In this document: positions 26,422-58,466 of the stretch, piece after piece
Position numbering within the stretch: the stretch's first letter is position 1
Layout of the letters: every line of letters starts with the position of its first letter
Virus record (IMG/VR): IMGVR_UViG_3300020438_000007
Span: 1 to 64,000 of that record
Length of the DNA stretch: 64,000 bases
Strand: one strand, 5' to 3'
The notes under the pieces: model-generated
Database searches by the model: none
Told to the model about the DNA's origin: nothing
What the model saw: the letters and a program-made list of their open reading frames with translations, nothing else
Program-made: the position numbers and the translations under genes

Positions 26422-26787
26422 TCATGTACCTAATCCTTTTCCTGATTTCATGTTTTCTTTACTACCGTATCTAGCTTTTGTTTCTACATACCCCTTTGTA
26501 TTATCACCATAACCCATCTCTTTGGCATCTGACTTAAGTTTTTGGTTTGCATTATGTTGTTTAAGATACTTACCTTCACCATCAGTCTTCGCACCTTTCA
26601 CTTTAGGTTTCTGGTTACTACCACTTCTCATGATAGCACCTTTACCATACTGAGCTGTGATGGATTTCTTTACTGCGTCCATTACAGAATCTTTAGATTT
26701 AGATAATGGTTTCTTAGTTCCACCTACATCATAACCTGTTTCTTTTTTGAGACGAGTCGCCTCTTGAAAATCTTGGAAGTTCTTCAT
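26422..26787 (-). CDS. Basic protein with a capsid-targeting-like N-terminus
   Basis: MKNFQDFQEA, compared with the T4 IP consensus MKTYQEFIAE. Confidence 0.75.
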   Translation of the reverse strand: MKNFQDFQEATRLKKETGYDVGGTKKPLSKSKDSVMDAVKKSITAQYGKGAIMRSGSNQKPKVKGAKTDGEGKYLKQHNANQKLKSDAKEMGYGDNTKGYVETKARYGSKENMKSGKGLGT

Positions 26788-28094
26788 TTCTTTTTACCTA
26801 AGTCTTTAATAGATGACGTACCTTGAACAATCTTTGAACGTCCATAGGGGTTTCTGACATCATCATTGTCAGCAGACTTACGATACCTTTCTGGTTGTCC
26901 TCTACCAGTTGTGTTATTTCTTTTCTTACCATCAAAAGAAGTATATTGATTGGAAGTTTTGTTTTTCCTACCTTTAAAGGCATATTCATCATTTCTTCTA
27001 CCCATCTTGTTTGCAAGACTTTTACTTATGCCCTTGTCTTCATTACCTTCACCAGCACCAGCATTGTAAGCGGCCATTCTGTTCTCATCAAGTGAGTCCA
27101 GTTCATCTCTCCAATTAGAGAAACTACTCATCTGGATTGCTGCTACCTTTTGTTGTAACTTTGTATCCTGTTTGTTGTCTTTCTTGATTATCTTATTAAC
27201 CAATGCTTTTTTGGCCATGTTAGCCGATTTTAATTTCCGTTCTGCTTGTCTTTGTGAAGCTTGATTGACTGGTGACATAGACATTTCATCTAGGTTGTGA
27301 TCAACTTCTTCTTTCTTTGAACTGTTACCATAGTTTGCAGCACCCTTCTTGCGACACTGTACTAATCTACCTGATGCGTATGCAGATGGCCAAACACTTG
27401 CACTTGCTTTTACTTTTTTATAACAAGCGTCTTTCTTACCACTACCACTTCCTTTCTTATCTTCTTCGGTAACTACTTCTTCTTTATTCAGGATCGCCTG
27501 CCTACGTCCTGAAGGATCTTGTATTGCAATGCGACGTTGCATCTGCTTATTGGCTTCTTTCGATTTACCATGATGTGCAGCGACAACTTCTTTAGCATAA
27601 GCTTTATCAGCCTGACGTGACATCTTCTCTTTAGGAAGTGGTTTGTATCCTTCTAAAAGAGCCTCCAGAACCATATCTCTAGAACCCCAAAGATCATTCT
27701 CACTAATAAATGCCTCTACTAATTCTTCATCAGACCATCTGTCTGTGTCATATCCCTCTTCTACAATACCTGTCAACCAAGTATCAAATGTCTCTCTATG
27801 ATTCTCTTTCTCTAGGAGTTTAAGTGTATTCCATTCCGATCTATACTTTCCTTCCTTCTTTAATTTCTTTTGTTGCCAAGAGTCAAGTGCCTGATCTGGA
27901 CGTTTCCCTGATGCCATCTCAGATTTCTTATGAGCTTGAAATGCAGAAGCGGACTTCGCTCTGTCAGCATCCCTCTGTTGGTTCTTTGCAGCTTGATCTT
28001 GAATCTTTTTCTTTACATTGTCCTCATTCTTTTGTAGATTAGGATGTAAAGGCGATTCATAAATTGCAGAATAGGCTTCAGAAAGTTTGTCCAT
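26784..28094 (-). CDS. Modular basic/acidic protein, putative internal head polyprotein
   Basis: Start at MDKLSE; many L-X-E sites; SNWRDEL motif; late promoter upstream. Confidence 0.8.
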   Translation of the reverse strand: MDKLSEAYSAIYESPLHPNLQKNEDNVKKKIQDQAAKNQQRDADRAKSASAFQAHKKSEMASGKRPDQALDSWQQKKLKKEGKYRSEWNTLKLLEKENHRETFDTWLTGIVEEGYDTDRWSDEELVEAFISENDLWGSRDMVLEALLEGYKPLPKEKMSRQADKAYAKEVVAAHHGKSKEANKQMQRRIAIQDPSGRRQAILNKEEVVTEEDKKGSGSGKKDACYKKVKASASVWPSAYASGRLVQCRKKGAANYGNSSKKEEVDHNLDEMSMSPVNQASQRQAERKLKSANMAKKALVNKIIKKDNKQDTKLQQKVAAIQMSSFSNWRDELDSLDENRMAAYNAGAGEGNEDKGISKSLANKMGRRNDEYAFKGRKNKTSNQYTSFDGKKRNNTTGRGQPERYRKSADNDDVRNPYGRSKIVQGTSSIKDLGKKK

Positions 28095-28125
28095 TTTAAA
28101 AGGATACAGTATAGCTATCATAACG

Positions 28126-28146
28126 TATTTATTATATCAATAAATA
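28126..28146. promoter_or_regulatory. Back-to-back divergent late promoters
   Basis: ATAAATA on the minus strand (28132-28126) and on the plus strand (28140-28146), at the strand switch. Confidence 0.8.
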
Positions 28147-28175
28147 GAAGACAGGGACTCTATATTTTTAGCTAA

Positions 28176-30731
28176 ATGGCTCGTCAGGGAATATTTACTG
28201 GATTCACACCGAATGATGGTCTGGGAGATTCCCTTGCCTTAGGCGCATCCAAAGTAAATCAAAACTTTACAGAGATTTATACTACCTTCGGTGACGGTAC
28301 AAATCTCAGTGTTAATGCAGGGAGTGCTGGTACTTGGACGAAGGCAGGGAACACAGGAATTTACACAAGTAAGAACGTTGGCATCGGTACGACTGATCCT
28401 ACTGCTTCTTTATTTGTATCAGGTAATGTTCAATTAACAGGTATTACAACTGGAACATTCGTTGGAGATGGTTCTGGTCTAACAGGTGTGACCGCAGTTG
28501 GTCAAGGTGTTGTTATAAAAGACAGTGGAACACTAGTTGGTGTTGCACAAAGTCTTAACTTAGATAAGAATTTAACTGTCACACAGGTGTTTGGTGGAAA
28601 TGTAACAGTTTCTGCTGCTGATACTGTAGGATTTGCGTTCACTTCTGGATTCTCTACTACATCTGCATACGCAAACGTTTCTGGAGTATCAACCACTGCA
28701 ACAACTGCTGGGTTTGCTGACACTGCAACACTGGCATACACTGCAAACTTCGCCACGATTGCTGGTATCGTAACTTACTCACAGGCATCTGGTATTGCAA
28801 CCAACTCTGGTGTTGCTGAGTATGCAAAGGTAGCTGGTATCGCATCATACGTTGCCAATGCAGGGTTCTCAACCATGGCGGGGTATGCACATACCGCAGG
28901 CATCGCCACAGTCGCACAGAATTTAACAGGAACTCCTTCTATTGTTATCGACAATATCAATTCTGCGATTGGTATTGTGACCATGCCTGGTCAAGGTAGT
29001 AAGATGCGTTTCGACTTTGACGCAACAGGTGATCTACCCCAATCAACCTCTTGGAGAGGTATGTTTGCATGGGCAAACAACACCAAGACTGCATATGTTT
29101 CCAGTGGAACCACAATGGGTGGTTACAATGGTTGGAGACAGATACTTCATCAGGATGACGAAGGCAACTACTTTACAGTAGGTGTCATAACTGCATCCAA
29201 GTTTGCTGGTGATGGATCTGGACTTACAAACTTACCATCAACAGATAGTATTTGGAGAACAAACTCCACTGGTATTCACACTCTCAGCAACGTTGGTCTT
29301 GGAACTACCAACACAGAAGGATATAAACTTAACGTACTAGGTAACTTAAAGTTACAAGGCAGACTGGACGGAACTGCAACAGATAATATACTACCTCACT
29401 TGTGGTCAACCTACGCATCTCTACCATCATCATCCACTTATCATGGTGCATTTGCTCACGTTCATGAGACAGGAAAGGCATACTATGCACACGCTGGTTG
29501 GAATGAACTGGTCAATAAAAATCAAGATCAATCGGTTGGAACTGGAACTGAAAACTATAGAGTTGGTGTTCTAACTGCAATATCATTTACTGGAGATGGA
29601 TCTGGTTTAAGTAATATCAATGTATCATACGCAGCTTCAGCTGGTATTGCAACTCTATCACAAGGACTAGAAGGTAAACCAGACATCTTAGTTGCTAACA
29701 TCAACTGTACTGGTATTACTACTAGTGCAACATTCGTTGGAGATGGTTCTGGACTGACAGGTATCACTGCATCTGGTAGTGGTATTATCATCAGAGAAGG
29801 CGGCACACTCGTAGGAACTATTGGAACTGTAAACTTCGGAACTGGTTTCGATGTTTCCCCTGCATCTGCTGGTGTAGTAACAGTCACCACATCAGGTGGC
29901 GGCGGTGGTGGTATCTCTGGTATTGTATATCAGGAGGAAGGATCTACTGTTGGTACTGCACAAACCGTTAACTTCATTGGTGTTGCATGTACAGTAACAC
30001 ATAGTGGTGGAGTTGCAACTGTCAACTTGGCAGGAGCAGTACCATTCACAGGACCTGCTGCAAGCATAACTGCACTTGACATTACACAGTATGAAGCAGC
30101 ATATGGATGGGGTGATCACTCTGGTGCTGGATATCTGACAGGTATAGGTGGTCAAGGATTAGGTAATCTAAACAACGTTTCTAATGTATCTCCAAGTACA
30201 AGTGATGTATTAACATGGAGTGGATCACAGTGGGCACCAGCCGCACCTACAGGTGGTAGTGGTGGAATAATAATTAAAGAAGAAGGAAGTCAAGTTGCAG
30301 CAGGAATCACCTCACTTAATTTTGTTGGATCTACTGTAAGTGCAACTGCTTCTGGAACAGATGGAACTATCACAATCACTTCTGGTGGTGGTGGAGGTGG
30401 CAGTATTTCCACAACTGGAGTTGGAACATACACTGCATCTGCTGGTGTGGAACAACAGGTAGATTCATGGTCTAAGTTAAGTTACTCTGGTGCAGAGTAC
30501 ACATTTATGATTGGTCTAGGAACATTCAGACAATCACAGAAAGTTCTTGTCATGCACGATGGAACTACGGCGTTCTCACAAGAATATGGCATCATGTTCT
30601 CTCCAGAACAACAGGTATCAATCGCTGCAACTGTAAGTAGTAACAACGTTCTAGTTAAAGTTACTCCTGAGTCAGGGATATCTGGTTTATCAACATACAG
30701 ATTCGTTAAAACTTTTATTGAGAACCTATGA
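28176..30731 (+). CDS. Tail fibre-like virion protein
   Basis: gp9/gp10-like N-terminus (NDGLGDSL..GASKVNQNFTEIY); VGIGTT and FxGDGSGLT repeats; Gly/Thr-rich. Confidence 0.85.
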   Translation: MARQGIFTGFTPNDGLGDSLALGASKVNQNFTEIYTTFGDGTNLSVNAGSAGTWTKAGNTGIYTSKNVGIGTTDPTASLFVSGNVQLTGITTGTFVGDGSGLTGVTAVGQGVVIKDSGTLVGVAQSLNLDKNLTVTQVFGGNVTVSAADTVGFAFTSGFSTTSAYANVSGVSTTATTAGFADTATLAYTANFATIAGIVTYSQASGIATNSGVAEYAKVAGIASYVANAGFSTMAGYAHTAGIATVAQNLTGTPSIVIDNINSAIGIVTMPGQGSKMRFDFDATGDLPQSTSWRGMFAWANNTKTAYVSSGTTMGGYNGWRQILHQDDEGNYFTVGVITASKFAGDGSGLTNLPSTDSIWRTNSTGIHTLSNVGLGTTNTEGYKLNVLGNLKLQGRLDGTATDNILPHLWSTYASLPSSSTYHGAFAHVHETGKAYYAHAGWNELVNKNQDQSVGTGTENYRVGVLTAISFTGDGSGLSNINVSYAASAGIATLSQGLEGKPDILVANINCTGITTSATFVGDGSGLTGITASGSGIIIREGGTLVGTIGTVNFGTGFDVSPASAGVVTVTTSGGGGGGISGIVYQEEGSTVGTAQTVNFIGVACTVTHSGGVATVNLAGAVPFTGPAASITALDITQYEAAYGWGDHSGAGYLTGIGGQGLGNLNNVSNVSPSTSDVLTWSGSQWAPAAPTGGSGGIIIKEEGSQVAAGITSLNFVGSTVSATASGTDGTITITSGGGGGGSISTTGVGTYTASAGVEQQVDSWSKLSYSGAEYTFMIGLGTFRQSQKVLVMHDGTTAFSQEYGIMFSPEQQVSIAATVSSNNVLVKVTPESGISGLSTYRFVKTFIENL

Positions 30732-32944
30732 TTCATACTAGTACGAACACTCTCGATAGGTCAGGCCTGGCTACCAAGCCAGTTGGAACTGATGACAAGA
30801 AGGCATACTCTATTAAATGTTATACCAAAAATGATTGGGTATTCATTCATGAGGAACTAGAGAAAGATGGATCATTGGAAGATAACATTCCTGATCCAAC
30901 AATAGTATGTCCTGACAAGAAGGAACATAGTGATACCAGAGCAACTTACATGTTGACTGATGCGGAAGCAGAGGATTTAAGAAAACATGAGAAGGTACAG
31001 TGGGTCTGTATTGACTATGATGTATATCCAGGCAACTATTCTCCAGATCCAAAAGATATTATCGCTGGTGTACAAAAATTTGGTAGGTTCAATAAGACAG
31101 TATCTAACTACAGAGCATGGAATACTTCGCCAACAGGCACTAGGCCACCAACAACCCAGGCTGGTATTGGTGCAACAGATAAGAACAGAACTGGATATCA
31201 AATACTAAGACATACACAAAAAGAAAACCCTTGGGATGCAACATCCACTGGGCTGACTGGATCTGATCATCTAATAATAGAGACTGAACCAAAGCAATTA
31301 GGTGATGGCACTGGTGTAGATGCAATCGTAGCTGATGATGGTTTCTGGATTGCACACCCAGAATTTGTAACAACTGACGATGATCCTGTAGGTTGGTCAA
31401 CAGGAAACGCATTAACATGGAGTGGTATATCTACAACTCCAGGCACATGTGGTGTTCTAGATGTACTTCTTGATGGTCCATATTATATTGACCCAGCATG
31501 GTTCAATGCAGATCCAGGCAATAGATTGATTCAACGTTGGGACGGAACAACAGTACCAGTAGAGTCTGTTGCAAGAGCATGGTGGTCTGATTCAAGTCAG
31601 AGATCAGTAGGATTCTCTACCATTGGCACTACAAATGGTTTCAGTGCTTCATATAGTAGACAAAGTTGCAACGGAAGTAACACACAGAAACCAACCAACG
31701 GTTCTGATCACGGAACTCAGTGTTCTGGTCAAGTATATGGTAAGAATTATGGATCGGCATATAACTGTAACAAATGGGTATTGAATGGTATCGGTGGTTC
31801 TAATGCTGGAATCAATGGTAGTCAATTTGATATACAGAAACTCTTCCACTTATATAAACCAAACTATGATAGACATTCTGCTATCACTGGTAAAGAAAAT
31901 GATACTAAAAACCCCACACTATCAAGTAATAGTTGGGGTTACAGATCTAGCTCTATACATACCACAGGTTACTATTGGTATAGACCATCAGCAACAGATG
32001 GATCAGAGACTGGCGTATCCTATAGTAGTGGTGCTGAACCAGAATTCATTGATTTACTAGGCGCATATGGTGATAGTAATAGGTGTAAAGGAGAGATGGT
32101 AGAAAGTTCTGTAACTGCTGCTGGTGATGAGTTAGCTGAGGCGGGAGTTATCTTCGTCTGTGCTGCTGGTAATAGTAATCAGACTCAATGTAGTCCTGGC
32201 GATCTTGACTTTGATAATTATTGGGCTACCAGTTCTCAAGGTAACAGTTCTTCCTTAGAATCCGCAACTCATAGTGAATTTGGATTGACATGTTATAACA
32301 CTATCAATAGAAGAGGATGGCCACAGGCACTAGGTAAAACCACATCTGGATTATCTACTGCTGGAACTGAATATGCTGCTATTAATATTGGTGCATTAGA
32401 TGATCAAATTACAAGTAGTGGACTAGGTGGTAACACCACAGACTACAAAGAAAAGAAAGTGAACTATAGTGATATGGGAACAGGTATTGATTGTTATGGT
32501 GCTGCTGATGACACACTCACAGCAGATGGAAGAGCATCATCTCTTACATATGTTCACCCAGAAACATATACTGGTCTCACACTTACCCCATATGATATTG
32601 ATTTTGGTGGTACTAGTTCTGGATGTCCTACATGTGCTGGTTGGTTAACTACCAAACTACAATATAATAGAGATTGGACTTGGAGAGAAATAAAAGATTG
32701 GTTGAAAAACCAGTGTGGTAGTCAATCTCCTGACAGATTTTACTATGGTGATAACATTACATCTTTCACTGCAACAACAGCTGCATGGGAAGATATGTAT
32801 TCCGTTCAGATGTATGGTCAAGGACCTGTTGTCATCTGGGATGCTCCTACTGGTTCACCTACCGAACCCAAAAAACCTGAGATAAAAATCACCAACTCCC
32901 CTAACCTTAAAATCAGTGGTGGAGTTGAGATAAAGTTCTCTTAA
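30728..32944 (+). CDS. Subtilisin-like S8 serine peptidase
   Basis: D (VADDG), H (DHGTQCSG), oxyanion N (AAGN) and S (GGTSSGCP); N-terminal propeptide-like region. Confidence 0.85.
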   Translation: MIHTSTNTLDRSGLATKPVGTDDKKAYSIKCYTKNDWVFIHEELEKDGSLEDNIPDPTIVCPDKKEHSDTRATYMLTDAEAEDLRKHEKVQWVCIDYDVYPGNYSPDPKDIIAGVQKFGRFNKTVSNYRAWNTSPTGTRPPTTQAGIGATDKNRTGYQILRHTQKENPWDATSTGLTGSDHLIIETEPKQLGDGTGVDAIVADDGFWIAHPEFVTTDDDPVGWSTGNALTWSGISTTPGTCGVLDVLLDGPYYIDPAWFNADPGNRLIQRWDGTTVPVESVARAWWSDSSQRSVGFSTIGTTNGFSASYSRQSCNGSNTQKPTNGSDHGTQCSGQVYGKNYGSAYNCNKWVLNGIGGSNAGINGSQFDIQKLFHLYKPNYDRHSAITGKENDTKNPTLSSNSWGYRSSSIHTTGYYWYRPSATDGSETGVSYSSGAEPEFIDLLGAYGDSNRCKGEMVESSVTAAGDELAEAGVIFVCAAGNSNQTQCSPGDLDFDNYWATSSQGNSSSLESATHSEFGLTCYNTINRRGWPQALGKTTSGLSTAGTEYAAINIGALDDQITSSGLGGNTTDYKEKKVNYSDMGTGIDCYGAADDTLTADGRASSLTYVHPETYTGLTLTPYDIDFGGTSSGCPTCAGWLTTKLQYNRDWTWREIKDWLKNQCGSQSPDRFYYGDNITSFTATTAAWEDMYSVQMYGQGPVVIWDAPTGSPTEPKKPEIKITNSPNLKISGGVEIKFS

Positions 32945-32950
32945 TAAATA
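32944..32950 (+). promoter_or_regulatory. Late promoter ATAAATA
   Basis: Intergenic match upstream of 32969. Confidence 0.7.
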
Positions 32951-32968
32951 CTAAAAAGTACTAGCGAA

Positions 32969-33832
32969 ATGGCAGAAAAATCATTTGGTGTAAAGGACCT
33001 GAATATAGTTGGAGCGAGTGGTGATCCAACTATAGAAAGTAATGGCGACCTTAATTTAAAAGCTGGTCAAGTTGCAATCCAAACTAACACCACAATCACA
33101 GGAGTAGTTACTGCAACATCATTCAGTGGTAATGGATCAGGATTAACAGGAGTTACTGCTTCTGGAACTGGTATCATCATCAAAGATGGTGGATCAACAG
33201 TTGGAACTGCTGGAACCATAGACTTTGGAGCAAACTTAAGTGTGTCCGCACTATCAGGTGCAGCTGTGACTGTGACTGCGAGTGCTGGCGGAATCACTAT
33301 TGAAGATGAAGGCAGTGCATTATCCACAGCTGCAACCACACTAGACTTTGTTGGAGGTGGAGTGGTTGCATCTGGTACTGGAGCAGAAAAAACAATTACT
33401 ATTGCTGGTGCATCTGTCCCTGCAAACTTAACTGCAACAACCTTAGATGTAGTTGGAATCGTAACTGCTGGTAGTTTTGTTACCGATCTAATTACTGGAA
33501 ACGGAAGTGATCGTGGATTCTGTACTAGATATTATGTAACTGCAAACGGTGCTTCAGACTATAGATTTGCAGGGCCTGGAATACTTAATACTGTAGGTGA
33601 TCCTACTCTATATCTACATAGAGGATTCACATACTTGTTTGAGAACTCAACTGGTAGTTCACACCCATTCCGTATTCAATTTACAGGAACAACTACAGGT
33701 GTGGGAACATATGTCAGTGGAAGTCAGAATGGAGCACAGATATTTACAATACCTCACGATGCTCCACTCAGTTATGAATATCAATGTACTGCACATGCCA
33801 GTATGAAAGGAACATTTATTATCCCTAATTAG
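32969..33832 (+). CDS. Short fibre-like protein with a C-terminal cupredoxin-like domain
   Basis: FSGNGSGLT and IEDEG..LDFVG fibre repeats; HPF...YQCTAHASM. Confidence 0.75.
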   Translation: MAEKSFGVKDLNIVGASGDPTIESNGDLNLKAGQVAIQTNTTITGVVTATSFSGNGSGLTGVTASGTGIIIKDGGSTVGTAGTIDFGANLSVSALSGAAVTVTASAGGITIEDEGSALSTAATTLDFVGGGVVASGTGAEKTITIAGASVPANLTATTLDVVGIVTAGSFVTDLITGNGSDRGFCTRYYVTANGASDYRFAGPGILNTVGDPTLYLHRGFTYLFENSTGSSHPFRIQFTGTTTGVGTYVSGSQNGAQIFTIPHDAPLSYEYQCTAHASMKGTFIIPN

Positions 33833-49209: not shown

Positions 49210-49365
49210 TTATCTCTTTTTATTTGCTGCTTCTTTCCACCTTCTCAATATTGTTCCCTTAAAAGGTAGATCATATCCAGCAACAGGACCTTTGGAATCT
49301 GCAGCAGAAGTGAAACCACCTGTACCAGCAGTCATCATCTCATTAAATTCCTTAAAAGTCTTCAT
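49210..49365 (-). CDS. Small protein (51 aa) with a T4 IPI-like N-terminus, not in the ORF track
   Basis: MKTFKEFNEMMTAGTGGFTSAADSKGPVAGYDLPFKGTILRRWKEAANKKR; AAGGA SD; ATGA overlap. Confidence 0.75.
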   Translation of the reverse strand: MKTFKEFNEMMTAGTGGFTSAADSKGPVAGYDLPFKGTILRRWKEAANKKR

Positions 49366-50631: not shown

Positions 50632-51735
50632 TTATAAAAAACTATCAAACATTTTCTCTCTGAATTGTAGGTTCCAATCTAGTATGTAATTCCAATTACA
50701 TTTAGTAGGATCGATACCCTCATAAAGTTCTTTCGCACCCTTACTAGCCATCTGCCAGAAAGGAGTATCAAAGTTAGAACCATTTAGATAGTGTAAGTTG
50801 ATGAACTTAATTACTTCATCCATGATACTTTGGTACATATTATTGTCGTACTTATTATCTAAGATCAGATCTATAATCATTCCATTTATTAGACCATAAC
50901 AACCAAGAGATGTTGCTTGTATGGGTTCTAGAAACAAGGCACGGTTACCATTGACAAATATATTACCATCTTCATTGACTAGACTCTTAGCATAGTAGTT
51001 CTTAAAGGAGAACTCTCTGCAATCTCTACTGTGGGACTCAATCTGATACTCTTGTAGGATATCTATGAGACTTGATTGTGCTTCTAGTTGTGATGTAATA
51101 TTAGAATTATACAAGTAACCCCAACCACTTCTATCTCTTAAAGGTATACCAAACATCCACCCATGTTCATGAGCAATATGGTAGGTATACTCCCAATCTC
51201 CAGGCGTGTATGACTTTACTACGATACCAGAGTCTAAGTAAACTTTATCTGTGATAATATAATCAGAGTAATCCTCTGGATATCCTCTACAATCAACTAC
51301 AAAATCATATACTTCACCATCAATAGATACCTTTTTACCTAAAGACTTTATTTCTTTTACTGTCCTAAGTTTTTCTGAGAAGTTCTGATACATCTTATTG
51401 AGCCTAGGTAAGATAAACCTAGGCAATTTTGTAGTATCAAACTGTATTCCATATGATCCAGAAGCAAAAGGAATGAAATGATCGCCATTCCAATTCTTAA
51501 ATTGAACTCCAAACTTTATAGTAGAACCTAGTTCATCTGCATCAAAATGATGAACATAGTCCACACCACAACTCAAGGCATGTGGAAATGAAACCAGAGA
51601 AGACTCACCAACTTCTATAGGATTGATGGTTCTACTATGGATTAGATCTACCTTAAAAAACTTTGGCAGTGACTCTAAGAGGGAAACAATACAATATAGT
51701 CCCGCTGTACCAGCACCGACTACGGCTACTTTCAT
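50632..51735 (-). CDS. Flavin-dependent halogenase-like protein (tryptophan halogenase family, short form)
   Basis: GAGTAG, VGES, TIKFGV.F, DCRG, GWMFGIPL and FLEPIQATS motifs. Confidence 0.85.
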   Translation of the reverse strand: MKVAVVGAGTAGLYCIVSLLESLPKFFKVDLIHSRTINPIEVGESSLVSFPHALSCGVDYVHHFDADELGSTIKFGVQFKNWNGDHFIPFASGSYGIQFDTTKLPRFILPRLNKMYQNFSEKLRTVKEIKSLGKKVSIDGEVYDFVVDCRGYPEDYSDYIITDKVYLDSGIVVKSYTPGDWEYTYHIAHEHGWMFGIPLRDRSGWGYLYNSNITSQLEAQSSLIDILQEYQIESHSRDCREFSFKNYYAKSLVNEDGNIFVNGNRALFLEPIQATSLGCYGLINGMIIDLILDNKYDNNMYQSIMDEVIKFINLHYLNGSNFDTPFWQMASKGAKELYEGIDPTKCNWNYILDWNLQFREKMFDSFL

Positions 51736-51948
51736 TTAGTCTTTCCAACCACCTGCTTTTAACCAGTTATTGTAGTGTGGATTATCCCAGTTATCACTAA
51801 TCTCATAAGATGGAATGACAACCTCTTGGATATATCTACGATTCTCTTCCACAAGTCTTACCTTGTGATCTATCTGAGCACCCCACCAAACTGCTGCACC
51901 TACTTGTGCTGCTAAGAATGTGAGTAATGGTATTGGTAAATTTTTCAT
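51736..51948 (-). CDS. Hypothetical membrane-anchored protein
   Basis: 70 aa with an N-terminal hydrophobic segment. Confidence 0.7.
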   Translation of the reverse strand: MKNLPIPLLTFLAAQVGAAVWWGAQIDHKVRLVEENRRYIQEVVIPSYEISDNWDNPHYNNWLKAGGWKD

Positions 51949-51949
51949 T

Positions 51950-52414
51950 TTAACCCTCGTTTAGTGTACCTCTAGATCTACGGAGAACTCGTAGTTCCTC
52001 AAAGTCTTTTTGTTTTTTACCACCATCATATGGCCAAGCATAACCCTCACCAATCATTTCTTCGTTGATTGACACAGGCTCGTCCCCAATGTAAAGCCAA
52101 CCAAGAAGACGCCCATATTTGCCAACCCCACCGACAAGTTCAGTACGGATAAGAAGATCATCGTCACCAGCCACCGCCTTCTGGAGTTTCTCTTTGAGCC
52201 AATTCGTCGCATCAATTCCAAGAGCTTTCTCCTCTAAGTCTCTAGTTCTTTTCTCAGGTGTGTCAATACCAGCAACTCGAACTCTCTCTTTCTTCGTCAG
52301 ATCAAATCCAAGATCAATAGTAACATCGATAGTATCTCCGTCAACTACCTTGTTAATTTTCGTCACTCGGAAGTTGTAACAACTCTTTCGTGACGGTGGG
52401 GTCATTGCTCCCAT
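51950..52414 (-). CDS. Thermonuclease (SNase) family nuclease
   Basis: VVDGDTID, RVRVAGIDTPE and GKYGRLLG motifs. Confidence 0.9.
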   Translation of the reverse strand: MGAMTPPSRKSCYNFRVTKINKVVDGDTIDVTIDLGFDLTKKERVRVAGIDTPEKRTRDLEEKALGIDATNWLKEKLQKAVAGDDDLLIRTELVGGVGKYGRLLGWLYIGDEPVSINEEMIGEGYAWPYDGGKKQKDFEELRVLRRSRGTLNEG

Positions 52415-52604
52415 AGTAAAACTCCATTAATGCTTTATTTATGGAGTCTTCTGGGGAAGTTCTCCATCGTTTCCGCCTTTCATTTCTTGCTTCTTCAAAC
52501 GCTTCATAAAGTTGGTCGTATATATCATCCCCCATCATCGGACTTGCCATGACTGGCATGGCTGTCATGAGAGTGAGTAACATCATTCGGAAAAAAATGG
52601 TCAT
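52353..52604 (-). CDS. Hypothetical protein
   Basis: 83 aa ORF; start uncertain; overlaps both neighbours. Confidence 0.55.
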   Translation of the reverse strand: MTIFFRMMLLTLMTAMPVMASPMMGDDIYDQLYEAFEEARNERRKRWRTSPEDSINKALMEFYYGSNDPTVTKELLQLPSDEN

Positions 52605-52683
52605 ATCTTATAATATAGTATATTAGAATAGAAATTGCAACCAGCAGTATAAAAATCATCCATACAATACTCCAGACTATCAT
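52525..52683 (-). CDS. Small membrane protein (52 aa), not in the ORF track
   Basis: MIVWSIVWMIFILLVAISILIYYIIRYDHFFPNDVTHSHDSHASHGKSDDGG; ATGA overlap. Confidence 0.5.
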   Translation of the reverse strand: MIVWSIVWMIFILLVAISILIYYIIRYDHFFPNDVTHSHDSHASHGKSDDGG

Positions 52684-52910
52684 AATGTTCTCTCTTTTGA
52701 CTTAATGAGATCAATCCTTGCTCTTAAATTTACTTCAGAATCTCTTTGAAGATGTCCATAAAACATATTCATATGAGTTTCAACCGTCTTCCATCCATGA
52801 TATTTTTTATGAGATCTTACCTTCATATAGTAGTCATGGAGTAGAAGTTTGGCATCATGTACCGTCATCCACTCATGTATTAGAGTTAAGTTGATGGCAT
52901 CCTGTTCCAT
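52680..52910 (-). CDS. Hypothetical protein
   Basis: 76 aa ORF within an operon. Confidence 0.7.
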   Translation of the reverse strand: MEQDAINLTLIHEWMTVHDAKLLLHDYYMKVRSHKKYHGWKTVETHMNMFYGHLQRDSEVNLRARIDLIKSKERTL

Positions 52911-52911
52911 T

Positions 52912-53226
52912 TTACAAAGTCCTTTCTAATCTGGTTGTTGCTTGGTCGGGAAAGTCTCTAGGTCTACTGTCGGTTGCGTTGTCGGTCTTGGGAGAACCTT
53001 CGTTCGCCTTCATAGTATGTTGATAGTTTGGTCTTGGGTATCTGATACGAAAGGGATCAGGCATCCAGTATGTTACTTGCCATTCTTGTTCTGGACATAA
53101 CTCAAGATGTTTCTCTACAGTATGGGAGAAACTACCAAGTTGAATGTAACCATCGTGACTGACACATCTGCCATCGCCAGTGTCAACCAAGAACATCATT
53201 TTACTACTCAATCTCTTTGTCTCCAA
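52912..53226 (-). CDS. Hypothetical protein
   Basis: 104 aa ORF within an operon. Confidence 0.75.
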   Translation of the reverse strand: METKRLSSKMMFLVDTGDGRCVSHDGYIQLGSFSHTVEKHLELCPEQEWQVTYWMPDPFRIRYPRPNYQHTMKANEGSPKTDNATDSRPRDFPDQATTRLERTL

Positions 53227-53507
53227 TCGTCAGATCTTTCTTGATGAAACCAGTCTACCACTTCATCTGGATTAAAGAAACCCCTACGGTGATTGTTTGA
53301 ATCGGGGTCTCCTAAATTCAAACCGTTAAGAAAAGAATCGTCTGGATTCGTATTCATACGTCTTGCTGTACTCAGCATACCTCTTGCGGACGTATTTGCT
53401 TTTGCTAATTTCTGTGCCCATATCATATCATCTATACTTACTTCTGTGCCTGCTGCGATAGATTTACATATGCCTTCTAGGCGAAGGCGATAAGCGGTGG
53501 ATAGCAT
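53208..53507 (-). CDS. Conserved cyanophage hypothetical protein
   Basis: MLSTAYRLRLEGIC...DDWRQRD; TATAAAT upstream. Confidence 0.8.
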   Translation of the reverse strand: MLSTAYRLRLEGICKSIAAGTEVSIDDMIWAQKLAKANTSARGMLSTARRMNTNPDDSFLNGLNLGDPDSNNHRRGFFNPDEVVDWFHQERSDDWRQRD

Positions 53508-53541
53508 TTGTTAATGTGTAGTATTACTATAATTTATAATA

Positions 53542-54045
53542 CTACATTACCATAGACATTGCATGTTGCAATTCTTTAGCATGTTGTAATTCGTCTTCTG
53601 CAATCTCTTGTATCTTTGTATCTTCTGGATGAACACTTAAATATTTTGTGTAGGTTTCAAATGCGTGCTTTTCTATCTTCATGTTTATGTCGTAAGCGTC
53701 CACAGGATCAATGAGATAATACCCAACCATGATCCAATAATAAACCAGAACAAGATGCTTGGCACAGAAACGGTCGATCCAATATTTATTTCCTTCCCTG
53801 CGTTCCATCTCTTCCAAGTGTTCTGTTTCATTGAGAGCCTGATAGAAGTGTTCTTTCATCAAGTATATATGATCCTTTCCTCTAAGTCCAAGGGATTCTC
53901 TAAAGTGTAACACACTGATAAATGCAAAGTAGGGTGCTCTCGCAATGACTTCCAATACCCAGAACCTTTGGAAAGGTCTGTTATGGTAAAGGAAGTCAAG
54001 TATTCCTATGGTTACACTTAATATTATAGTGTTAAATTGTTTCAT
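53542..54045 (-). CDS. ptox: Plastoquinol terminal oxidase
   Basis: RFWVLEVIARAPYF, NETEHL, IEKHA..TY and DELQH diiron motifs. Confidence 0.95.
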   Translation of the reverse strand: MKQFNTIILSVTIGILDFLYHNRPFQRFWVLEVIARAPYFAFISVLHFRESLGLRGKDHIYLMKEHFYQALNETEHLEEMERREGNKYWIDRFCAKHLVLVYYWIMVGYYLIDPVDAYDINMKIEKHAFETYTKYLSVHPEDTKIQEIAEDELQHAKELQHAMSMVM

Positions 54046-54134
54046 TGTGCGTAGGCAATTTGCGGTAAGTATATCATTGCGAATGTAATTGCTGTAAATA
54101 TTATAATAGTAGATGCTATTGGGAAATGTTTCAT
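54042..54134 (-). CDS. Hydrophobic micropeptide (30 aa), not in the ORF track
   Basis: MKHFPIASTIIIFTAITFAMIYLPQIAYAQ; ATGA overlaps at both ends. Confidence 0.65.
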   Translation of the reverse strand: MKHFPIASTIIIFTAITFAMIYLPQIAYAQ

Positions 54135-54295
54135 ACGTCTTCTTTCAGAATTTCATACAAAGAAAAAGGATGTTCCTGTAGATAGGGAACATCCTTCTTC
54201 GCTTGTTCTTGTGCTTGAAATGAGGTTTCTGCGTATTCGCAGATATGATGCTCAAAATTCTCTTTGTCGTGCCAACCAAGGGTGTAGTGGGACAT
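54131..54295 (-). CDS. Small hypothetical protein (54 aa), not in the ORF track
   Basis: MSHYTLGWHDKENFEHHICEYAE...DVPYLQEHP; GGAG SD. Confidence 0.75.
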   Translation of the reverse strand: MSHYTLGWHDKENFEHHICEYAETSFQAQEQAKKDVPYLQEHPFSLYEILKEDV

Positions 54296-54320
54296 GATAG
54301 TTTCAACTCCAGTACGCTAT

Positions 54321-54328
54321 TATTTATA
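54321..54328 (-). promoter_or_regulatory. Late promoter TATAAATA for the ptox operon
   Basis: Exact T4 late consensus in an intergenic position. Confidence 0.7.
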
Positions 54329-54373
54329 ATAACATACTAGGTATAAACCACTAGTTATGTGTGGACTTACTGA

Positions 54374-54646
54374 CTATCCGATTGTGTATCCAGCTGCTGC
54401 ACCCAAGACTTCAGCATTGGCCGCAAAGATTGCTTCGGTTGATTTTTTCTCTACAAACTCAACAGTATTGGCCGGCATTGTGAACGTTCCTGTTGTGGTT
54501 GATCCACCAACAGAATCAATAACACTTACCAATCTTGCAGTGCTACCATTGTTAACAAGACGCACTACCGTCGCACTTCCGAATGTAGAAGCATTAGCAG
54601 CATCTGTGCCACATGCGGCTTGAGTTCCTTTTATGTTAGTTAACAT
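54374..54646 (-). CDS. Small putative structural protein
   Basis: 90 aa, Ala/Thr-rich and beta-type. Confidence 0.75.
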   Translation of the reverse strand: MLTNIKGTQAACGTDAANASTFGSATVVRLVNNGSTARLVSVIDSVGGSTTTGTFTMPANTVEFVEKKSTEAIFAANAEVLGAAAGYTIG

Positions 54647-54652
54647 GATTCC

Positions 54653-56200
54653 TTAATAACCTCTCTTATATTTAGCGGATTCATCCTCTGGGTTGATGAT
54701 GATTGTATTTTTACCACTCATGGGTTTAATCTCTTTGTTCTTATCTGGATACTTTTTATCAGTTTCCCAGATAAATTCTTCACGCCAGTCAGAGTATGAC
54801 TCATTTCTTTGTTCAGAGACTCCCATTTTTTTCAGTGCTGCTGCTTTTGCTTTATCCTTCTGCATCTGAGCATAGGTTCTCATGTTTTTCTTGCCCGCAG
54901 CCTTTGCCTCCTGTTCCGCTTTGATGAAATTAGTTGCCTCTTTGACTTCTTTTGCCTTTTCATCTCTCAATCCTTGAATGATTTTATCTGCTGCGTTTCT
55001 TGTCTGCTCTTTACTACTTGCTTTAGTTGCTGGTCTACCCCTCTTACCACTAGTAGATCCTTTTGGTCTACCAGCTTTCTTCGGAACTGATGTTGCCTTA
55101 ACAGTGATTGCCTTATCTCCACTCTCATCATCTTTCTTTCCCTGTGCTTTCATGGCGGCCATGAGTCTATTAGCGCCTGCGTCAGACTTCTTGTTCTTCT
55201 CATTCTGATTGATAGCAGCTTTGACTGCACCCTTCACTATAGGAGAATTGGTCTTCCCACCTTCTCCACCTGTTGTAGTAAGTTTTCCGCCTGGTGATCT
55301 TACAATGTTTCCAATTTTCTGTCCAGAGTCTTTCTCTACTTGGTTCTTAGCAGAGGTGTCTTTCGATGCTGTTTTAATCTGTTTTTCAACTGTTTTATTA
55401 TCAGGCGATTTTGTGAACTTCCTCATCGACGAAGAGTCTTTACTCTGTGTGGGAGTCTTGGATGTATCATTAGTAGTTTGTTTCCTTACCTTTCTAGATT
55501 CTCTATACTTATCCTCTGCTGTTTTTCTTGCAGCTGCTCTTCTTTCCTGGCCTGGTCTATACTTTTCAGCATCACCTGTGATAGTTTTACCACCAGAAGT
55601 TTTTACTTCTTGGGGTTTGTCCATACCAATAAACTTTTTGCCAACACCCTTAAGTGCTGTACCAAGTACACCCCTAGTTCCAGTACCACCAGTAGTAACT
55701 TTATCTGAATCAGAACCTGTAACTTTACTTCTTGGTAATCCTTTTGTGTCTTGTGCTTTCTTTTTATCTTTATAAGCAGAGATGCCACCACCAATAGTAG
55801 ATTGAGCTCTACCAGCCAGGGCTCTCATATTAGTTCCAAGTCCAGTTCCTCTGGTTGCATCTTCTTTATCTGGTCTGTATTTTGCAAATCCTGATACAGC
55901 TCCGCCTACTGCGGAAAGTTGTCTTTGTCCTCTATCAGACGATGCGTACTTACTTGCTCTATCTTTATTCCTATCTAACGTCGCCTGTATCCCTCTTTTC
56001 TTAGTTCCATCGTTTAATCTTCCAGCCCTTGTAGGAATACTAGGAGCCTGAGCACCTTTAGTTACAGGAGATCTAGCTCCTGTAGTGGTGGACTTAACAG
56101 AAGCTGTAGTTTTAGTTTTATCAAAACGTTTTGAGACATCCACTCCAACAATCTCAGTTATTGGAGACTGTTCATATTCAAATTGTTCAAAGCTTTTCAT
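54653..56200 (-). CDS. Large basic low-complexity protein with a capsid-targeting-like N-terminus
   Basis: MKSFEQFEYE..ITE; Lys/Gly/Ala-rich body; ESYSDWREEF motif. Confidence 0.8.
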   Translation of the reverse strand: MKSFEQFEYEQSPITEIVGVDVSKRFDKTKTTASVKSTTTGARSPVTKGAQAPSIPTRAGRLNDGTKKRGIQATLDRNKDRASKYASSDRGQRQLSAVGGAVSGFAKYRPDKEDATRGTGLGTNMRALAGRAQSTIGGGISAYKDKKKAQDTKGLPRSKVTGSDSDKVTTGGTGTRGVLGTALKGVGKKFIGMDKPQEVKTSGGKTITGDAEKYRPGQERRAAARKTAEDKYRESRKVRKQTTNDTSKTPTQSKDSSSMRKFTKSPDNKTVEKQIKTASKDTSAKNQVEKDSGQKIGNIVRSPGGKLTTTGGEGGKTNSPIVKGAVKAAINQNEKNKKSDAGANRLMAAMKAQGKKDDESGDKAITVKATSVPKKAGRPKGSTSGKRGRPATKASSKEQTRNAADKIIQGLRDEKAKEVKEATNFIKAEQEAKAAGKKNMRTYAQMQKDKAKAAALKKMGVSEQRNESYSDWREEFIWETDKKYPDKNKEIKPMSGKNTIIINPEDESAKYKRGY

Positions 56201-56207
56201 GTGTATC

Positions 56208-57059
56208 CTACTTCTGGATGGACTTGTGTGCTTTAAGAATAGAACTTGCGTGTTTCTCTACAGTCTCTTCTGACATAGTTTCTTCCACTTCCTCTTCTTG
56301 TTTAGAGAACGAAACTGGACTCTTGACATTGAAACTCTCGTTCTTAGGACGGCAATCATTCACCATCTTGTTTCCTTTCTTCTTCATTCCGACTTTCTTA
56401 TGAGTATCCCAACAGGCAACTTCATCTACGTTCTCTACTTCTTCCTTCTTCATTGCCTTTCCGATTGCGTCACGACGATTCTTAAGGTATGAATCAGACT
56501 TATCTACATCACCATCATTATCAACATCAGCATCTTCCTTTCCGACTGGATCTAATTTCTTTTTCTTTTTCTTTCCTTCCTCTAAAGGAGTTACTTGATA
56601 CCTTGTACCAGACATCTCTCCAAGAGTAGTAAGGTTTGCTGCAACCTGATCCCAGAGTCTATTGGCCAAGTTCTCATCTGGATTACCTAATGGTTTTGGA
56701 GTAACAACATCAGTAATCTCATGAGTTAAATTACCATCCATATCATGCAATTCAACAGATTCACTGTTGTTAAGTTGACCCTTTCCTCTAAGTTTATCAG
56801 CAGTATCTTTAACTTTTCCGACACCATCAGCAACAGCACCAACCTTACCAGCAATGTTTGCAGCCTTAGAAAGTCCACCCATTACTTTAGCACCCTTAAT
56901 GGCACCCATGGCGGCCTTTGCTGCCAGTAAAGAACCAGTAACTACAGCCTCATCAGTCTGTTCCTTATCATCATGCTCGATGACTTTACCATCAGTATCT
57001 TTCTGATGATGTTCATACATTGATTTATAAGCATTAACCAGTTTTGAATCGTCAGTCAT
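56208..57059 (-). CDS. Modular protein with a DxDxDG loop, putative internal head protein
   Basis: DADVDNDGDVDKSD; CW...KKKGNKMVNDC module; multiple hydrophobic-X-E sites; late motif at 57102-57096. Confidence 0.8.
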   Translation of the reverse strand: MTDDSKLVNAYKSMYEHHQKDTDGKVIEHDDKEQTDEAVVTGSLLAAKAAMGAIKGAKVMGGLSKAANIAGKVGAVADGVGKVKDTADKLRGKGQLNNSESVELHDMDGNLTHEITDVVTPKPLGNPDENLANRLWDQVAANLTTLGEMSGTRYQVTPLEEGKKKKKKLDPVGKEDADVDNDGDVDKSDSYLKNRRDAIGKAMKKEEVENVDEVACWDTHKKVGMKKKGNKMVNDCRPKNESFNVKSPVSFSKQEEEVEETMSEETVEKHASSILKAHKSIQK

Positions 57060-57098
57060 GATAGTAAAAAAATTAGATAGGCCTTGATCTATCCTTAT

Positions 57099-58466
57099 TT
57101 ATCCCTTTCCAACTTTGTAAGGTATAGATGTATCATTATATTTTACTCCAGGTCCACTAGGAGGATCATTAGGATTCTTTACTTTCTTGCCATCATGGTA
57201 AGAACCACTGGTAATTGGTTTAATAATAGGATCATTATTCCATTTCTTATCACCTTGGCCTGGTGTCATTCTCTGCATGTATTGTCTATACTCATCTGTC
57301 CCTACATCATATGCCTCTGTCAAGTCTTTTAACCATGCTTTGTACATAGTAGACTCTGGAGTTTGTACGATAACATGATTCGCACCTCTTCTAGTAATTC
57401 TACCTCTCACTCCAGTGTTTACATTCTCTACTAATGATCCTACTTTATAACATTGCTCGTTGAGATATGCAATTCTCAATCCAAATGGATCTAACTTAGG
57501 TGCATACTGCCATGTCTCAGAAGCTAATGATCCTCTAAGTTGATCATCAGTGGCTCCCATAGATTTTTGAATGAGGTTGAAGAGATTTTTTTTCTCCATA
57601 TTACCTAAGTTGGGAATACCTTTTGCAAATCCTTTGAAGTCATCCTTTGCTACTGCATCTCTCATCTTAGATGCAGACATACCCTCTACACCATCTGAGT
57701 CTGGATCTCTTGCACCAGCAGATATGACTTGAAGATCCTCAAAATCATATAAGTCACCATTATATTTCTGTGCAAGACTTTGGAATTCGGAGAGTCTATC
57801 TTGTCCTACAACTATTGTTATTGCTTTGTATCCTAGATTGAAGGCACCTGTAAGAACATCAAATATAGTTCTTGCATTAGGATCATCTTTGATATCCTCT
57901 TCATAATCTGGGAACATCTTCCTCATATATTCTATTTTCGCACCAGGCTGTAGAGGATTCTTCTTAGAATCTACACTACGACTTGGATATACCTTCAAGT
58001 CAAATCCTAGTCTGTTTGCTTCTGATTTTGCTTTTTGTAATAACTTTTCGTGTCCTACTGTTGGTGGATTGAATCTACCAAATACAACTACTGCACCCTC
58101 GCTAGCAGGATTTCCCATCACCTCTGCTGTCTGTTTATCCGATTCGCCAGGCTCAGGTGATTTGGTTGCGGTAGAAGAAGGATCTTCCTTTGGTTTTGGT
58201 TTTGGAGAAGATGCAACTGGAGCAGGTGCTTTCTTCTGGACAGTGGGTTTCTCAGGTGTGGCAACTTTAGTAGATTTTGGATCGTCGGTGGCGGCCGCAC
58301 CCCCTCCTCCTGTGTATTGAAGTTTACCGCTTACAGTTTTTGCAACGAATTTACCCTTAGCATCATACCAGCCTCCATGACCGTCGCCCTTTAGTCCCTT
58401 GAGTTTAGCCTCAGTGGATGCAGCAGTCTTTACAGCTTCTGTTAAAAATTGACCGAAGGATTTCAC
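57099..58466 (-). CDS. Cytidylyltransferase-like HxGH nucleotidyltransferase with a capsid-targeting-like N-terminus
   Basis: GTG start MKSFGQFLTEA; FGRFNPPTVGHEKL, VVGQDR and MSASKMR motifs; late motif at 58498-58492. Confidence 0.88.
   Translation of the reverse strand: MKSFGQFLTEAVKTAASTEAKLKGLKGDGHGGWYDAKGKFVAKTVSGKLQYTGGGGAAATDDPKSTKVATPEKPTVQKKAPAPVASSPKPKPKEDPSSTATKSPEPGESDKQTAEVMGNPASEGAVVVFGRFNPPTVGHEKLLQKAKSEANRLGFDLKVYPSRSVDSKKNPLQPGAKIEYMRKMFPDYEEDIKDDPNARTIFDVLTGAFNLGYKAITIVVGQDRLSEFQSLAQKYNGDLYDFEDLQVISAGARDPDSDGVEGMSASKMRDAVAKDDFKGFAKGIPNLGNMEKKNLFNLIQKSMGATDDQLRGSLASETWQYAPKLDPFGLRIAYLNEQCYKVGSLVENVNTGVRGRITRRGANHVIVQTPESTMYKAWLKDLTEAYDVGTDEYRQYMQRMTPGQGDKKWNNDPIIKPITSGSYHDGKKVKNPNDPPSGPGVKYNDTSIPYKVGKG

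What the first reader, a model, noticed from the sequence alone, without database searches (positions are those of the whole stretch)
26422..58466. Four dispersed genes share a T4 internal-protein capsid-targeting N-terminus
Seen: MKNFQDFQEA (26787), MKTFKEFNEM (49365, unannotated), MKSFEQFEYE (56200) and MKSFGQFLTEA (58466), with the consensus MK(S/T/N)Fx(E/Q/D)F. Knowledge: T4 IPI starts MKTFKEF and IPII/IPIII start MKTYQEFIAE. Two of the modular proteins also share an internal motif (SFSNWRDEL and SYSDWREEF) that may be a second prohead-core-binding signal. Inference: these signals define the head cargo of this phage.
Basis: partly seen in the sequence, partly recalled or inferred. Interest (0 to 1): 0.66.

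Follow-up and report, generated by a model that had tools for sequence, protein, structure and literature searches.

The report
T4-type capsid-targeting leaders in a cyanophage
Four genes of this marine T4-like cyanophage begin with the same short leader that phage T4 uses to load proteins into its head, which would explain why an NMNAT-like enzyme keeps appearing in cyanophage particles and lets head cargo be predicted from sequence.

Summary
The window is the first 64 kb of a 230.7-kb T4-like cyanomyovirus, about 85% identical in DNA to S-SSM7. Genome-wide, K[STN]Fx[EQD]F occurs six times in six frames, and four of these are the reported ORF starts (P about 2e-10).

T4's own record confirms that IPI starts MKTFKEF and IPII/IPIII start MKTYQEFIAE.

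In 48 distinct homologous leaders of the nucleotidyltransferase gene, F4 (47/48), F7, [LIV]8, E10 and A11 (all 48/48) are kept through synonymous codon changes. Positions 5 and 9 vary freely. Positions 4, 7, 8 and 10 are the ones shown to matter in T4.

The genome encodes a gp21-type protease and a gp22 scaffold. The leader's F-L-x-E end matches the gp23 maturation junction.

Relatives of two of the four families have been found in purified virions (S-SCSM1, S-CREM2, S-SM1). A degenerate DNA scan of IMG/VR found at least 120 such leaders against 7 for a reversed control. All were at ORF starts, nearly all were on T4-like contigs, and they sit on at least 33 unrelated proteins.

Not shown here: that these four proteins are in heads, or that the leader is cut off. 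The leaders do not define the whole cargo, and the role of the WR[DE]E motif is unknown.

Verdict: new members of a known kind.

The parts
57099..58466 (-). Tagged cargo 1: 455-aa basic protein (pI 9.1). It has a 10-residue leader, a small beta domain, a disordered Pro/Lys linker, a HIGH-motif nucleotidyltransferase domain (residues about 121-310) and a C-terminal beta barrel. It belongs to T4-GC190, the 'cytidylyltransferase/NMNAT' of cyanophages.
   Evidence: PF01467, E 0.0019; phrog_395, 1e-99; AF2 model; Foldseek PPAT/NaMNAT hits, about 15% identity. Relatives found in virions.
58437..58466 (-). Leader of cargo 1: (M)KSFGQFLTE, with the predicted cut after E10 before A11. It has the same length and register as T4 IPII/IPIII, and 7 of 10 residues match the T4 gp23 junction AFGSFLTE|A.
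54653..56200 (-). Tagged cargo 2: 515-aa Lys-rich low-complexity protein (pI 10.1, net charge +54). It has a conserved leader, a variable middle and a conserved C-terminal module of about 50 aa.
   Evidence: No Pfam or PHROG family.
56153..56200 (-). Leader of cargo 2: MKSFEQF, then a spacer, then ITE at residues 14-16, with the predicted cut after E16. This resembles the 19-residue T4 IPI leader, which ends in ITE.
   Evidence: Thirteen homologues all have MKS[FY]xxF followed by [LIV]xE at positions 10-17.
54773..54799 (-). SYSDWREEF motif at the start of the conserved C-terminal module. An IWE site follows it directly.
49210..49365 (-). Tagged cargo 3: 51-aa basic peptide (pI 10.0). The 9-residue leader MKTFKEFNE is followed by a copy of the N-terminal arm of mature gp23. 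It belongs to phrog_696 and lies two genes upstream of the primase.
   Evidence: 39% identity over 41 aa to this phage's gp23 residues 53-92. Long-form relatives found in virions.
26422..26787 (-). Tagged cargo 4: 121-aa basic protein (pI 9.9, T4-GC422). The leader is MKNFQDFQE, with the predicted cut before ATRLKKE.
   Evidence: In other phages the same module is preceded by [LVFM]-x-E, whether it stands alone or sits inside larger proteins.
26784..28121 (-). Untagged modular neighbour (445 aa) that holds SFSNWRDEL at 27125-27099. It has the second leader type (MDKLSEAYSAIYE, from the Met at 28094) and overlaps the start of cargo 4.
56208..57059 (-). Untagged neighbour (283 aa) between cargo 1 and cargo 2, with the second leader type. 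It is homologous to S-SCSM1 gp280, which is annotated as a virion protein.
58492..58499 (-). GATAAATA, a late-promoter-like NATAAATA motif 33 nt upstream of cargo 1. Similar motifs lie at 57096-57103 and 28126-28133.
   Evidence: 38 such motifs on this strand in 230 kb. The motif is described for S-PM2 in PMC2984593.

Best explanation
The four ORFs carry a genuine T4-type capsid-targeting leader, M-K-x-F-x-x-F-(h)-x-E.

Inferred mechanism, by analogy with T4 IPIII:
1. The genes are transcribed late.
2. The leader docks the protein to the gp22/gp21 scaffolding core while the prohead forms. Its C-terminal half copies the F-L-x-E maturation junction of the major capsid protein gp23.
3. The gp21 (Peptidase S77) prohead protease cuts after the Glu.
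4. The basic mature protein stays in the head with the DNA and enters the host at infection.

The cargo here is:
- a HIGH-motif nucleotidyltransferase (NMNAT/PPAT-like, substrate unknown);
- a 515-aa Lys-rich protein;
- a 121-aa basic module;
- a 51-aa copy of the gp23 N-arm.

Shown: the motif, its conservation pattern, the assembly machinery, virion presence of relatives, and portability of the leader. Inferred: docking, cleavage and ejection.
For: 1. Specificity: four of the six genome-wide motif hits are ORF starts.

2. Identity to T4: IPI MKTFKEF and IPII/III MKTYQEFIAE, read from the T4 record.

3. Protein-level selection on the positions that matter in T4. In 48 distinct leaders, F4 is kept in 47/48 (TTT 24, TTC 23). 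F7, [LIV]8 (eight different codons), E10 and A11 are kept in 48/48. Positions 5 and 9 take 8 and 11 different residues. In T4, residues 4 and 7 govern targeting and residues 8 and 10 govern processing (PMC9026906).

4. Machinery: Peptidase_S77 (7e-38) and the T4_CASP scaffold (4e-80) are in the genome.

5. Protease calibration: the gp23 junction is SLTE|A in this phage, FL[YS]E| in related contigs and FLTE|A in T4.

6. Every family has a conserved Glu between an exchangeable leader and a conserved mature module.

7. Virion proteomics of relatives:
- nucleotidyltransferase: S-SCSM1 gp281 (MKSFLQFLKEA) and S-CREM2 gp154 (MKNFSSFLTEA) were detected, and T4-GC190 is flagged as a structural protein;
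- phrog_696 family: S-CREM2 gp160 had 7 peptides and T4-GC426 is flagged with 17 counts in S-SM1.

8. Portability: at least 120 IMG/VR stretches match the leader, against 7 for the reversed control. All 84 matches examined are at ORF starts. 76 of 80 loci share genes with this T4-like phage. The cargo falls into 33 unrelated clusters, including DPBB, GNAT and glucosaminidase domains.

9. All four proteins are basic, pI 9.1-10.1.

10. Late-promoter-like motifs lie upstream of the operons.
Against: - There is no proteomic or N-terminal data for this phage or for S-SSM7.
- Leader removal has not been shown in any cyanophage. The S-SCSM1 supplement holds no peptide list.
- Virion detection does not separate head from tail. 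Cargo 4 lies beside baseplate and fibre genes.
- Two leaders (26787, 49365) are one residue shorter, with F rather than L/I at P3.
- S-SCSM1 gp030 carries the tag but was not annotated as detected.
- S-PM2 has the enzyme domain without the tag.
- Several virion-detected relatives of cargo 3 have other leaders.
- For families 2 and 4 there is no virion evidence at all.
Confidence: 0.72

Rival explanations
1. The leaders are only protease-recognition propeptides, or relics of duplicated gp23 junctions. They would be cut by gp21, or not used at all, and would not be what brings the proteins into the prohead. Loading would depend on other parts of the proteins.
For: The processing half of the leader equals the gp23 junction. 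Cargo 3 is a gp23 N-arm copy. Relatives of cargo 3 reach virions with other leaders. Untagged neighbours have homologues that are virion proteins.
Against: F4, which lies outside the cleavage site, is as conserved as E10, and it is a targeting residue in T4. The same 11-residue leader heads 33 unrelated proteins that share no other segment.
Confidence: 0.14
2. The tag directs proteins to another part of the virion or the cell, such as the tail or baseplate lumen or the membrane, rather than the head interior.
For: The proteomes cited are of whole virions. Cargo 4 and its operon adjoin baseplate and fibre genes. Some tagged cargo elsewhere are peptidoglycan hydrolases, which are often tail-associated.
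Against: The leader matches the head-specific T4 signal and the capsid protein junction. Cleavage after Glu is a prohead protease activity. The leader has no hydrophobic stretch for membrane insertion.
Confidence: 0.08
3. The shared start is a nucleotide-level feature, such as A-rich codons after the start that aid translation, or a chance resemblance.
For: MK starts and AAA codons are common in highly expressed phage genes.
Against: Conserved residues are kept through synonymous codons, and through both ATG and GTG starts. The reversed-pattern control gives 7 stretches against at least 120. Genome-wide P is about 2e-10.
Confidence: 0.02

Closest known systems
Capsid targeting sequence (CTS) of phage T4 internal proteins IPI, IPII and IPIII (Mullaney and Black 1996, as reviewed in PMC9026906 and PMC3012670)
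   Same: N-terminal position, a length of 9-16 residues and the consensus MK(T/S)(F/Y)xxF. It ends in hydrophobic-x-Glu. The cargo is basic and otherwise unrelated. The genes are dispersed. A gp21 protease and gp22 scaffold are present.
   Different: The host phage is a cyanomyovirus (Kyanoviridae), far from the T-evens. One cargo is a 455-aa enzyme. Two leaders are one residue shorter, with F at P3. No experimental proof of loading or cleavage exists.
Maturation junction of the major capsid protein gp23 (T4 residues 57-66, cut after Glu65)
   Same: The F-x-x-F-L-T-E|A of T4 gp23 matches the leader of cargo 1 at 7 of 10 positions. This phage's gp23 has AFQSLTE|A, the register of the two 9-residue leaders.
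   Different: In gp23 the junction is internal, at the end of a propeptide of about 57-65 residues. In the tagged proteins it is the whole propeptide.
T4 gp61.1 (54 aa, function unknown, just upstream of primase gene 61)
   Same: It starts MKTFKEFIKE, is followed by a copy of its own phage's gp23 N-arm (46% identity over 37 aa), and lies next to the primase gene. Cargo 3 shares all three features.
   Different: The two fall in different PHROG families (phrog_1823 and phrog_696). Each resembles only its own phage's gp23, so common descent is not shown.
Propeptide-bearing ejection proteins of giant phages phiKZ and SPN3US (PMC5694885)
   Same: Head-internal proteins processed after Glu by a related prohead protease.
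   Different: Those propeptides are mostly over 100 residues, and the cleavage motifs are A/S-x-E. There is no MKxFxxF consensus.

Membership tests
T4-type capsid targeting sequence (CTS) | Located at the extreme N-terminus of the protein, about 10-19 residues long | tested here: met
   All four motifs follow the start codon directly. Start positions are confirmed in homologues.
T4-type capsid targeting sequence (CTS) | Consensus MK(T)(F/Y)xxF, with aromatic residues at positions 4 and 7 (the targeting determinants in T4) | tested here: met
   F4 and F7 are present in all four. In the family of cargo 1, F4 is kept in 47/48 and F7 in 48/48 distinct leaders through synonymous codons. The T4 sequences were read from the record.
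T4-type capsid targeting sequence (CTS) | Ends in a prohead-protease site, L/I-x-E followed by a small residue | tested here: met
   LTE|A (58466) and ITE|I at residues 14-16 (56200) fit the T4 rule. FQE|A (26787) and FNE|M (49365) have F at P3. This agrees with the junctions of the same modules in other phages ([LVFM]-x-E) and with the register of this phage's gp23 junction, but it departs from the T4 rule.
T4-type capsid targeting sequence (CTS) | The phage encodes the gp21 serine protease and the gp22 scaffolding core | tested here: met
   PF03420 Peptidase_S77 at 7e-38 and PF25623 T4_CASP at 4e-80, at G000 91.5-92.3 kb and 90.4-91.5 kb.
T4-type capsid targeting sequence (CTS) | The tagged protein is present in the mature head | tested here: inconclusive
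   Relatives of cargo 1 and cargo 3 were detected in whole-virion proteomes of S-SCSM1, S-CREM2 and S-SM1. There are no data for cargo 2 or 4, none for this phage, and heads were not separated from tails.
T4-type capsid targeting sequence (CTS) | The leader is removed on maturation | not testable with these tools
   This needs semi-tryptic or N-terminal peptide data. The supplement held lists no peptides.
T4-type capsid targeting sequence (CTS) | The leader alone is sufficient to load a foreign protein | not testable with these tools
   Indirect support only: the same leader heads at least 33 unrelated natural proteins.
NMN/NaMN adenylyltransferase (name given to cargo 1 in the literature) | HxGH nucleotidyltransferase fold with specificity for NMN or NaMN | tested here: inconclusive
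   The fold and the GxFxPxTxGH motif are present. Foldseek ranks PPAT and NaMNAT about equally, at 12-19% identity. Pfam PF01467 scores below its cut-off. There is no sequence hit in the PDB. The substrate is not assignable.

The most novel reading that the evidence does not exclude
The T4 capsid-targeting sequence is a free-standing copy of the major capsid protein's own maturation junction. It has been kept almost letter for letter from coliphage T4 to marine cyanomyoviruses. There it serves as a portable address label on dozens of unrelated proteins, including a nucleotidyltransferase, peptidoglycan hydrolases and a GNAT. If so, the set of proteins ejected into the host by this abundant group of ocean viruses can be read directly from genomes and metagenomes. 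The small gp23-arm copies (cargo 3 here, gp61.1 in T4) would be the evolutionary link between the capsid protein junction and the label.
Probability: 0.45. Interest if true: 0.75.

Novelty: new member of a known kind. Interest (0 to 1): 0.6.

Why it matters
Papers on S-SCSM1 and S-CREM2 report NMNAT/cytidylyltransferase-like proteins in cyanophage virions and ask how and why they get there (PMC9602691, PMC10665884). A conserved T4-type leader gives a concrete, testable loading mechanism.

It also gives a sequence rule for predicting which proteins marine T4-like phages carry into Prochlorococcus and Synechococcus at the first moment of infection. In T4, such proteins are anti-defence factors.

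The match between the leader and the gp23 maturation junction suggests where the signal came from and what it binds.

Practically, the leader could be used to load reporters or enzymes into cyanophage capsids, as has been done with T4.

In full-text searches of the held library I found no paper linking the capsid targeting sequence to cyanophages. The Syn9 and S-PM2 proteome papers are not held, so earlier mention cannot be excluded.

Tried and rejected
- Complex prediction of the first 45 residues of cargo 1 with gp22 gave no answer (score 0.00). This is not evidence either way.
- A sequence search of cargo 1 against the PDB found nothing.
- Pfam and PHROGs gave nothing for cargo 2 and cargo 4.
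- I considered that cargo 3 and T4 gp61.1 are orthologues. PHROGs place them in different families, and the pairwise match is mostly the leader. I keep this only as a parallel.
- I looked for peptide-level data to see leader removal in S-SCSM1. The supplement has no peptide list.
- The Syn9 structural paper is not held.
- I checked whether the tag is universal on the enzyme. In S-PM2 the domain sits in a 592-aa protein without the tag.
- I began fetching the full S-SCSM1 annotation to score tag against virion status genome-wide, and stopped after the first 50 kb. A pattern scan had already shown only two ATG-type tags in that genome.
- I did not use sequencing-run searches or read laying. They cannot address encapsidation.
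Full report
**What the window is.** The window is the first 64 kb of a single-contig, 230,739-bp virus genome. Its DNA is about 85% identical to Synechococcus phage S-SSM7 (Kyanoviridae, Lipsvirus), a T4-like cyanomyovirus. The genome has the T4 head module in T4 order, with gp21 identified as Peptidase_S77 and gp22 as T4_CASP.

**The observation.** All four N-termini are present at the stated coordinates on the minus strand.
- A six-frame scan of the whole genome finds K[STN]Fx[EQD]F six times. Four are these ORF starts and two are internal chance hits.
- The probability that four or more of six fall on ORF starts is about 2e-10.
- The first seven residues at 49365 are identical to T4 IPI.

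**Conservation of the leader in cargo 1.** The 455-aa protein at 58466 belongs to the cyanophage core family T4-GC190. In 79 related IMG/VR loci, down to 46% identity, every copy starts M-[KR]-x-F-x-x-F-[LIV]-x-E-A.
- Among 48 distinct DNA leaders, F4, F7, the hydrophobic residue 8, E10 and A11 are essentially invariant. Their codons vary freely, and the start codon is ATG in 25 and GTG in 23.
- Positions 5 and 9 take 8 and 11 different residues.
- This is selection on the protein. It falls on the positions that amber-suppressor work on T4 IPIII identified: 4 and 7 for targeting, 8 and 10 for processing (PMC9026906).

**The other three families.**
- Homologues of the 515-aa protein all start MKS[FY]xxF and then have an [LIV]xE site at positions 10-17, like the longer IPI leader. 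Next comes a variable Lys-rich middle and a conserved C-terminal module of about 50 residues.
- The 121-aa protein is a module. In close relatives it stands alone behind MKNFQ[DE]FQE, MKNFQDFLLE or MKTFNDFLTE.
- In other cyanomyoviruses that module is the C-terminal part of 200-950-aa modular proteins. In the copies that keep its ATR start it is preceded by [LVFM]-x-E, directly before ATRLKKE.
- The 51-aa protein has a mature part that is always preceded by Glu, while the leader in front varies between phages.
- So each family shows a conserved Glu junction between an exchangeable leader and a conserved mature part. Propeptide removal would produce this pattern.

**The leader copies the capsid protein's cleavage junction.**
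- In this phage gp23 reads ...AFQSLTE|ASP. In related marine contigs it reads ...FL[YS]E|. In T4 it reads ...AFGSFLTE|AEIGG.
- The leader of cargo 1, KSFGQFLTE|A, matches the T4 gp23 junction at 7 of 10 positions.
- The two 9-residue leaders have the register of this phage's own gp23 junction.
- The 51-aa protein continues past the junction as a copy of the gp23 N-terminal arm (39% identity over 41 residues). T4 gp61.1, which starts MKTFKEFIKE and sits beside the primase gene, does the same with T4 gp23 (46% over 37 residues). Neither matches the other phage's gp23.
- This explains the odd 'major head protein' labels on these small genes.
- It suggests that the leader binds the same partner as the end of the gp23 propeptide. 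That step is inference.

**Virion evidence from relatives.**
- T4-GC190 is listed as an experimentally determined structural protein.
- For the phrog_696 family, S-CREM2 gp160 gave 7 peptides, and T4-GC426 is flagged with 17 counts in S-SM1.
- T4-GC422 (cargo 4) is absent from the three phages analysed in 2010, so it was never tested.
- The family of cargo 2 is confined to S-SSM7-like phages and Sf-FS3.
- A tagged small protein of S-SCSM1, gp030, is not annotated as detected.

**Portability.** The reversed pattern found 7.
- All 84 matches in the 80 loci returned lie at ORF starts.
- 76 of the 80 loci share genes with this genome, including gp17, gp18, gp20, gp23, gp41 and gp43.
- The mature parts fall into 33 unrelated clusters.
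- Besides the nucleotidyltransferase (29 copies), these include a DPBB lytic-transglycosylase domain, a GNAT, a glucosaminidase, DUF6267, and stand-alone versions of modules that occur inside the 782-aa ORF at 24072-26420.

**The cargo.**
- All four proteins are basic.
- The AlphaFold model of cargo 1 (mean pLDDT 67) shows a helix over residues 4-12, a small beta domain, a disordered linker, a Rossmann-type HIGH nucleotidyltransferase domain and a beta barrel.
- Foldseek matches phosphopantetheine and NaMN adenylyltransferases about equally, at roughly 15% identity. The substrate therefore remains open, although the literature calls the protein NMNAT.

**Expression context.** NATAAATA motifs, the late-promoter form reported for S-PM2, lie 33, 44 and 12-39 nt upstream of ORFs 58466, 57059 and 28121/28094. 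Cargo 4 overlaps the stop of the preceding ORF and the start of the following ORF, so it forms an operon with two other likely virion proteins.

**Limits.**
- Nothing here shows the window's own proteins in heads, or that any cyanophage leader is cut.
- Whole-virion proteomes do not separate head from tail.
- The tag is not the only route into the particle. Homologues of four untagged neighbours are virion proteins in S-SCSM1, and two of these neighbours carry a second conserved leader.
- S-PM2 has the enzyme domain without the tag.
- The WR[DE]E motif is conserved in two families here and in a virion protein of S-CREM2. It always sits 2-6 residues before an [LI]xE site. Its role is unknown.

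**Verdict.** The main interpretation is well supported by comparative evidence but has not been demonstrated. The claim that the tag defines the whole cargo is too strong. These are new members of a known kind, with a useful extension: conservation across the T4 superfamily, an enzyme as cargo, and a link to the capsid protein junction.

Noticed in passing
window 28056-28094 (ORF 28121-26784) and 57012-57059 (ORF 57059-56208): A second conserved N-terminal leader, roughly M(T/S)DDxxLxxAYxS(I/M)Y, then a spacer, then [LI]DE. It heads both untagged modular proteins and about 40 relatives, including S-SCSM1 gp089, which was detected in virions. It may be a second loading or processing signal.
   Followed up: partly
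window 49210-49365; T4 locus L085:967-1131: The 51-aa ORF and T4 gp61.1 are each a leader plus a copy of the N-terminal arm of their own phage's gp23. Each matches only its cognate gp23, and both lie next to the primase gene. This explains the 'major capsid protein' labels on these small genes. Their function is unknown.
   Followed up: partly
outside the window: G000 99481-99729, minus strand: A fifth tagged ORF (83 aa, MKSFKSISE) lies between the gp16 and gp17 terminase genes. It resembles S-SCSM1 gp030 (MKTFKQFMSE), which lies two genes upstream of that phage's large terminase gene.
   Followed up: partly
window 27099-27125 and 54773-54799; S-CREM2 locus L087:1492-2013: The motif FSxWR[DE]E[LF] is conserved in two families here and in S-CREM2 virion protein gp155. 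In every case an [LI]xE site follows within 2-6 residues.
   Followed up: partly
window 24072-26420: The 782-aa Lys-rich ORF is a chain of small modules: DUF3008, a WF..DG..GW module, DUF6321 and a Cys-rich YYC..DKKCK module. In other marine T4-like contigs, the last three of these occur as separate small proteins, each behind its own MKxFxxF leader. This suggests fusion and fission of head-cargo modules.
   Followed up: partly
window 58503-59762: The 419-aa ORF upstream of cargo 1 (phrog_2496) starts MARTAEEVLE, with V-L-E at residues 8-10 as in the 10-residue propeptide of T4 gp24. Its S-SCSM1 homologue gp282 is annotated as a virion protein.
   Followed up: no
S-SSM7 locus L001:6278-7952: The S-SSM7 counterpart of the 515-aa ORF is annotated as two overlapping CDS (SSSM7_196 and SSSM7_197). 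This points to a frameshift or an annotation split in that record.
   Followed up: no
loci L123-L153; Syn9 locus L088:5472-6200: Many modular proteins in other cyanomyoviruses start MLSFKxLSEKK, with F4, L7 and E9. This looks like a variant of the same leader with Leu in place of Lys2.
   Followed up: no
loci L003, L004, L089: IMG/VR contigs from several metagenomes encode proteins 100% identical to the window's, so this phage or a near-identical one recurs in environmental samples.
   Followed up: no
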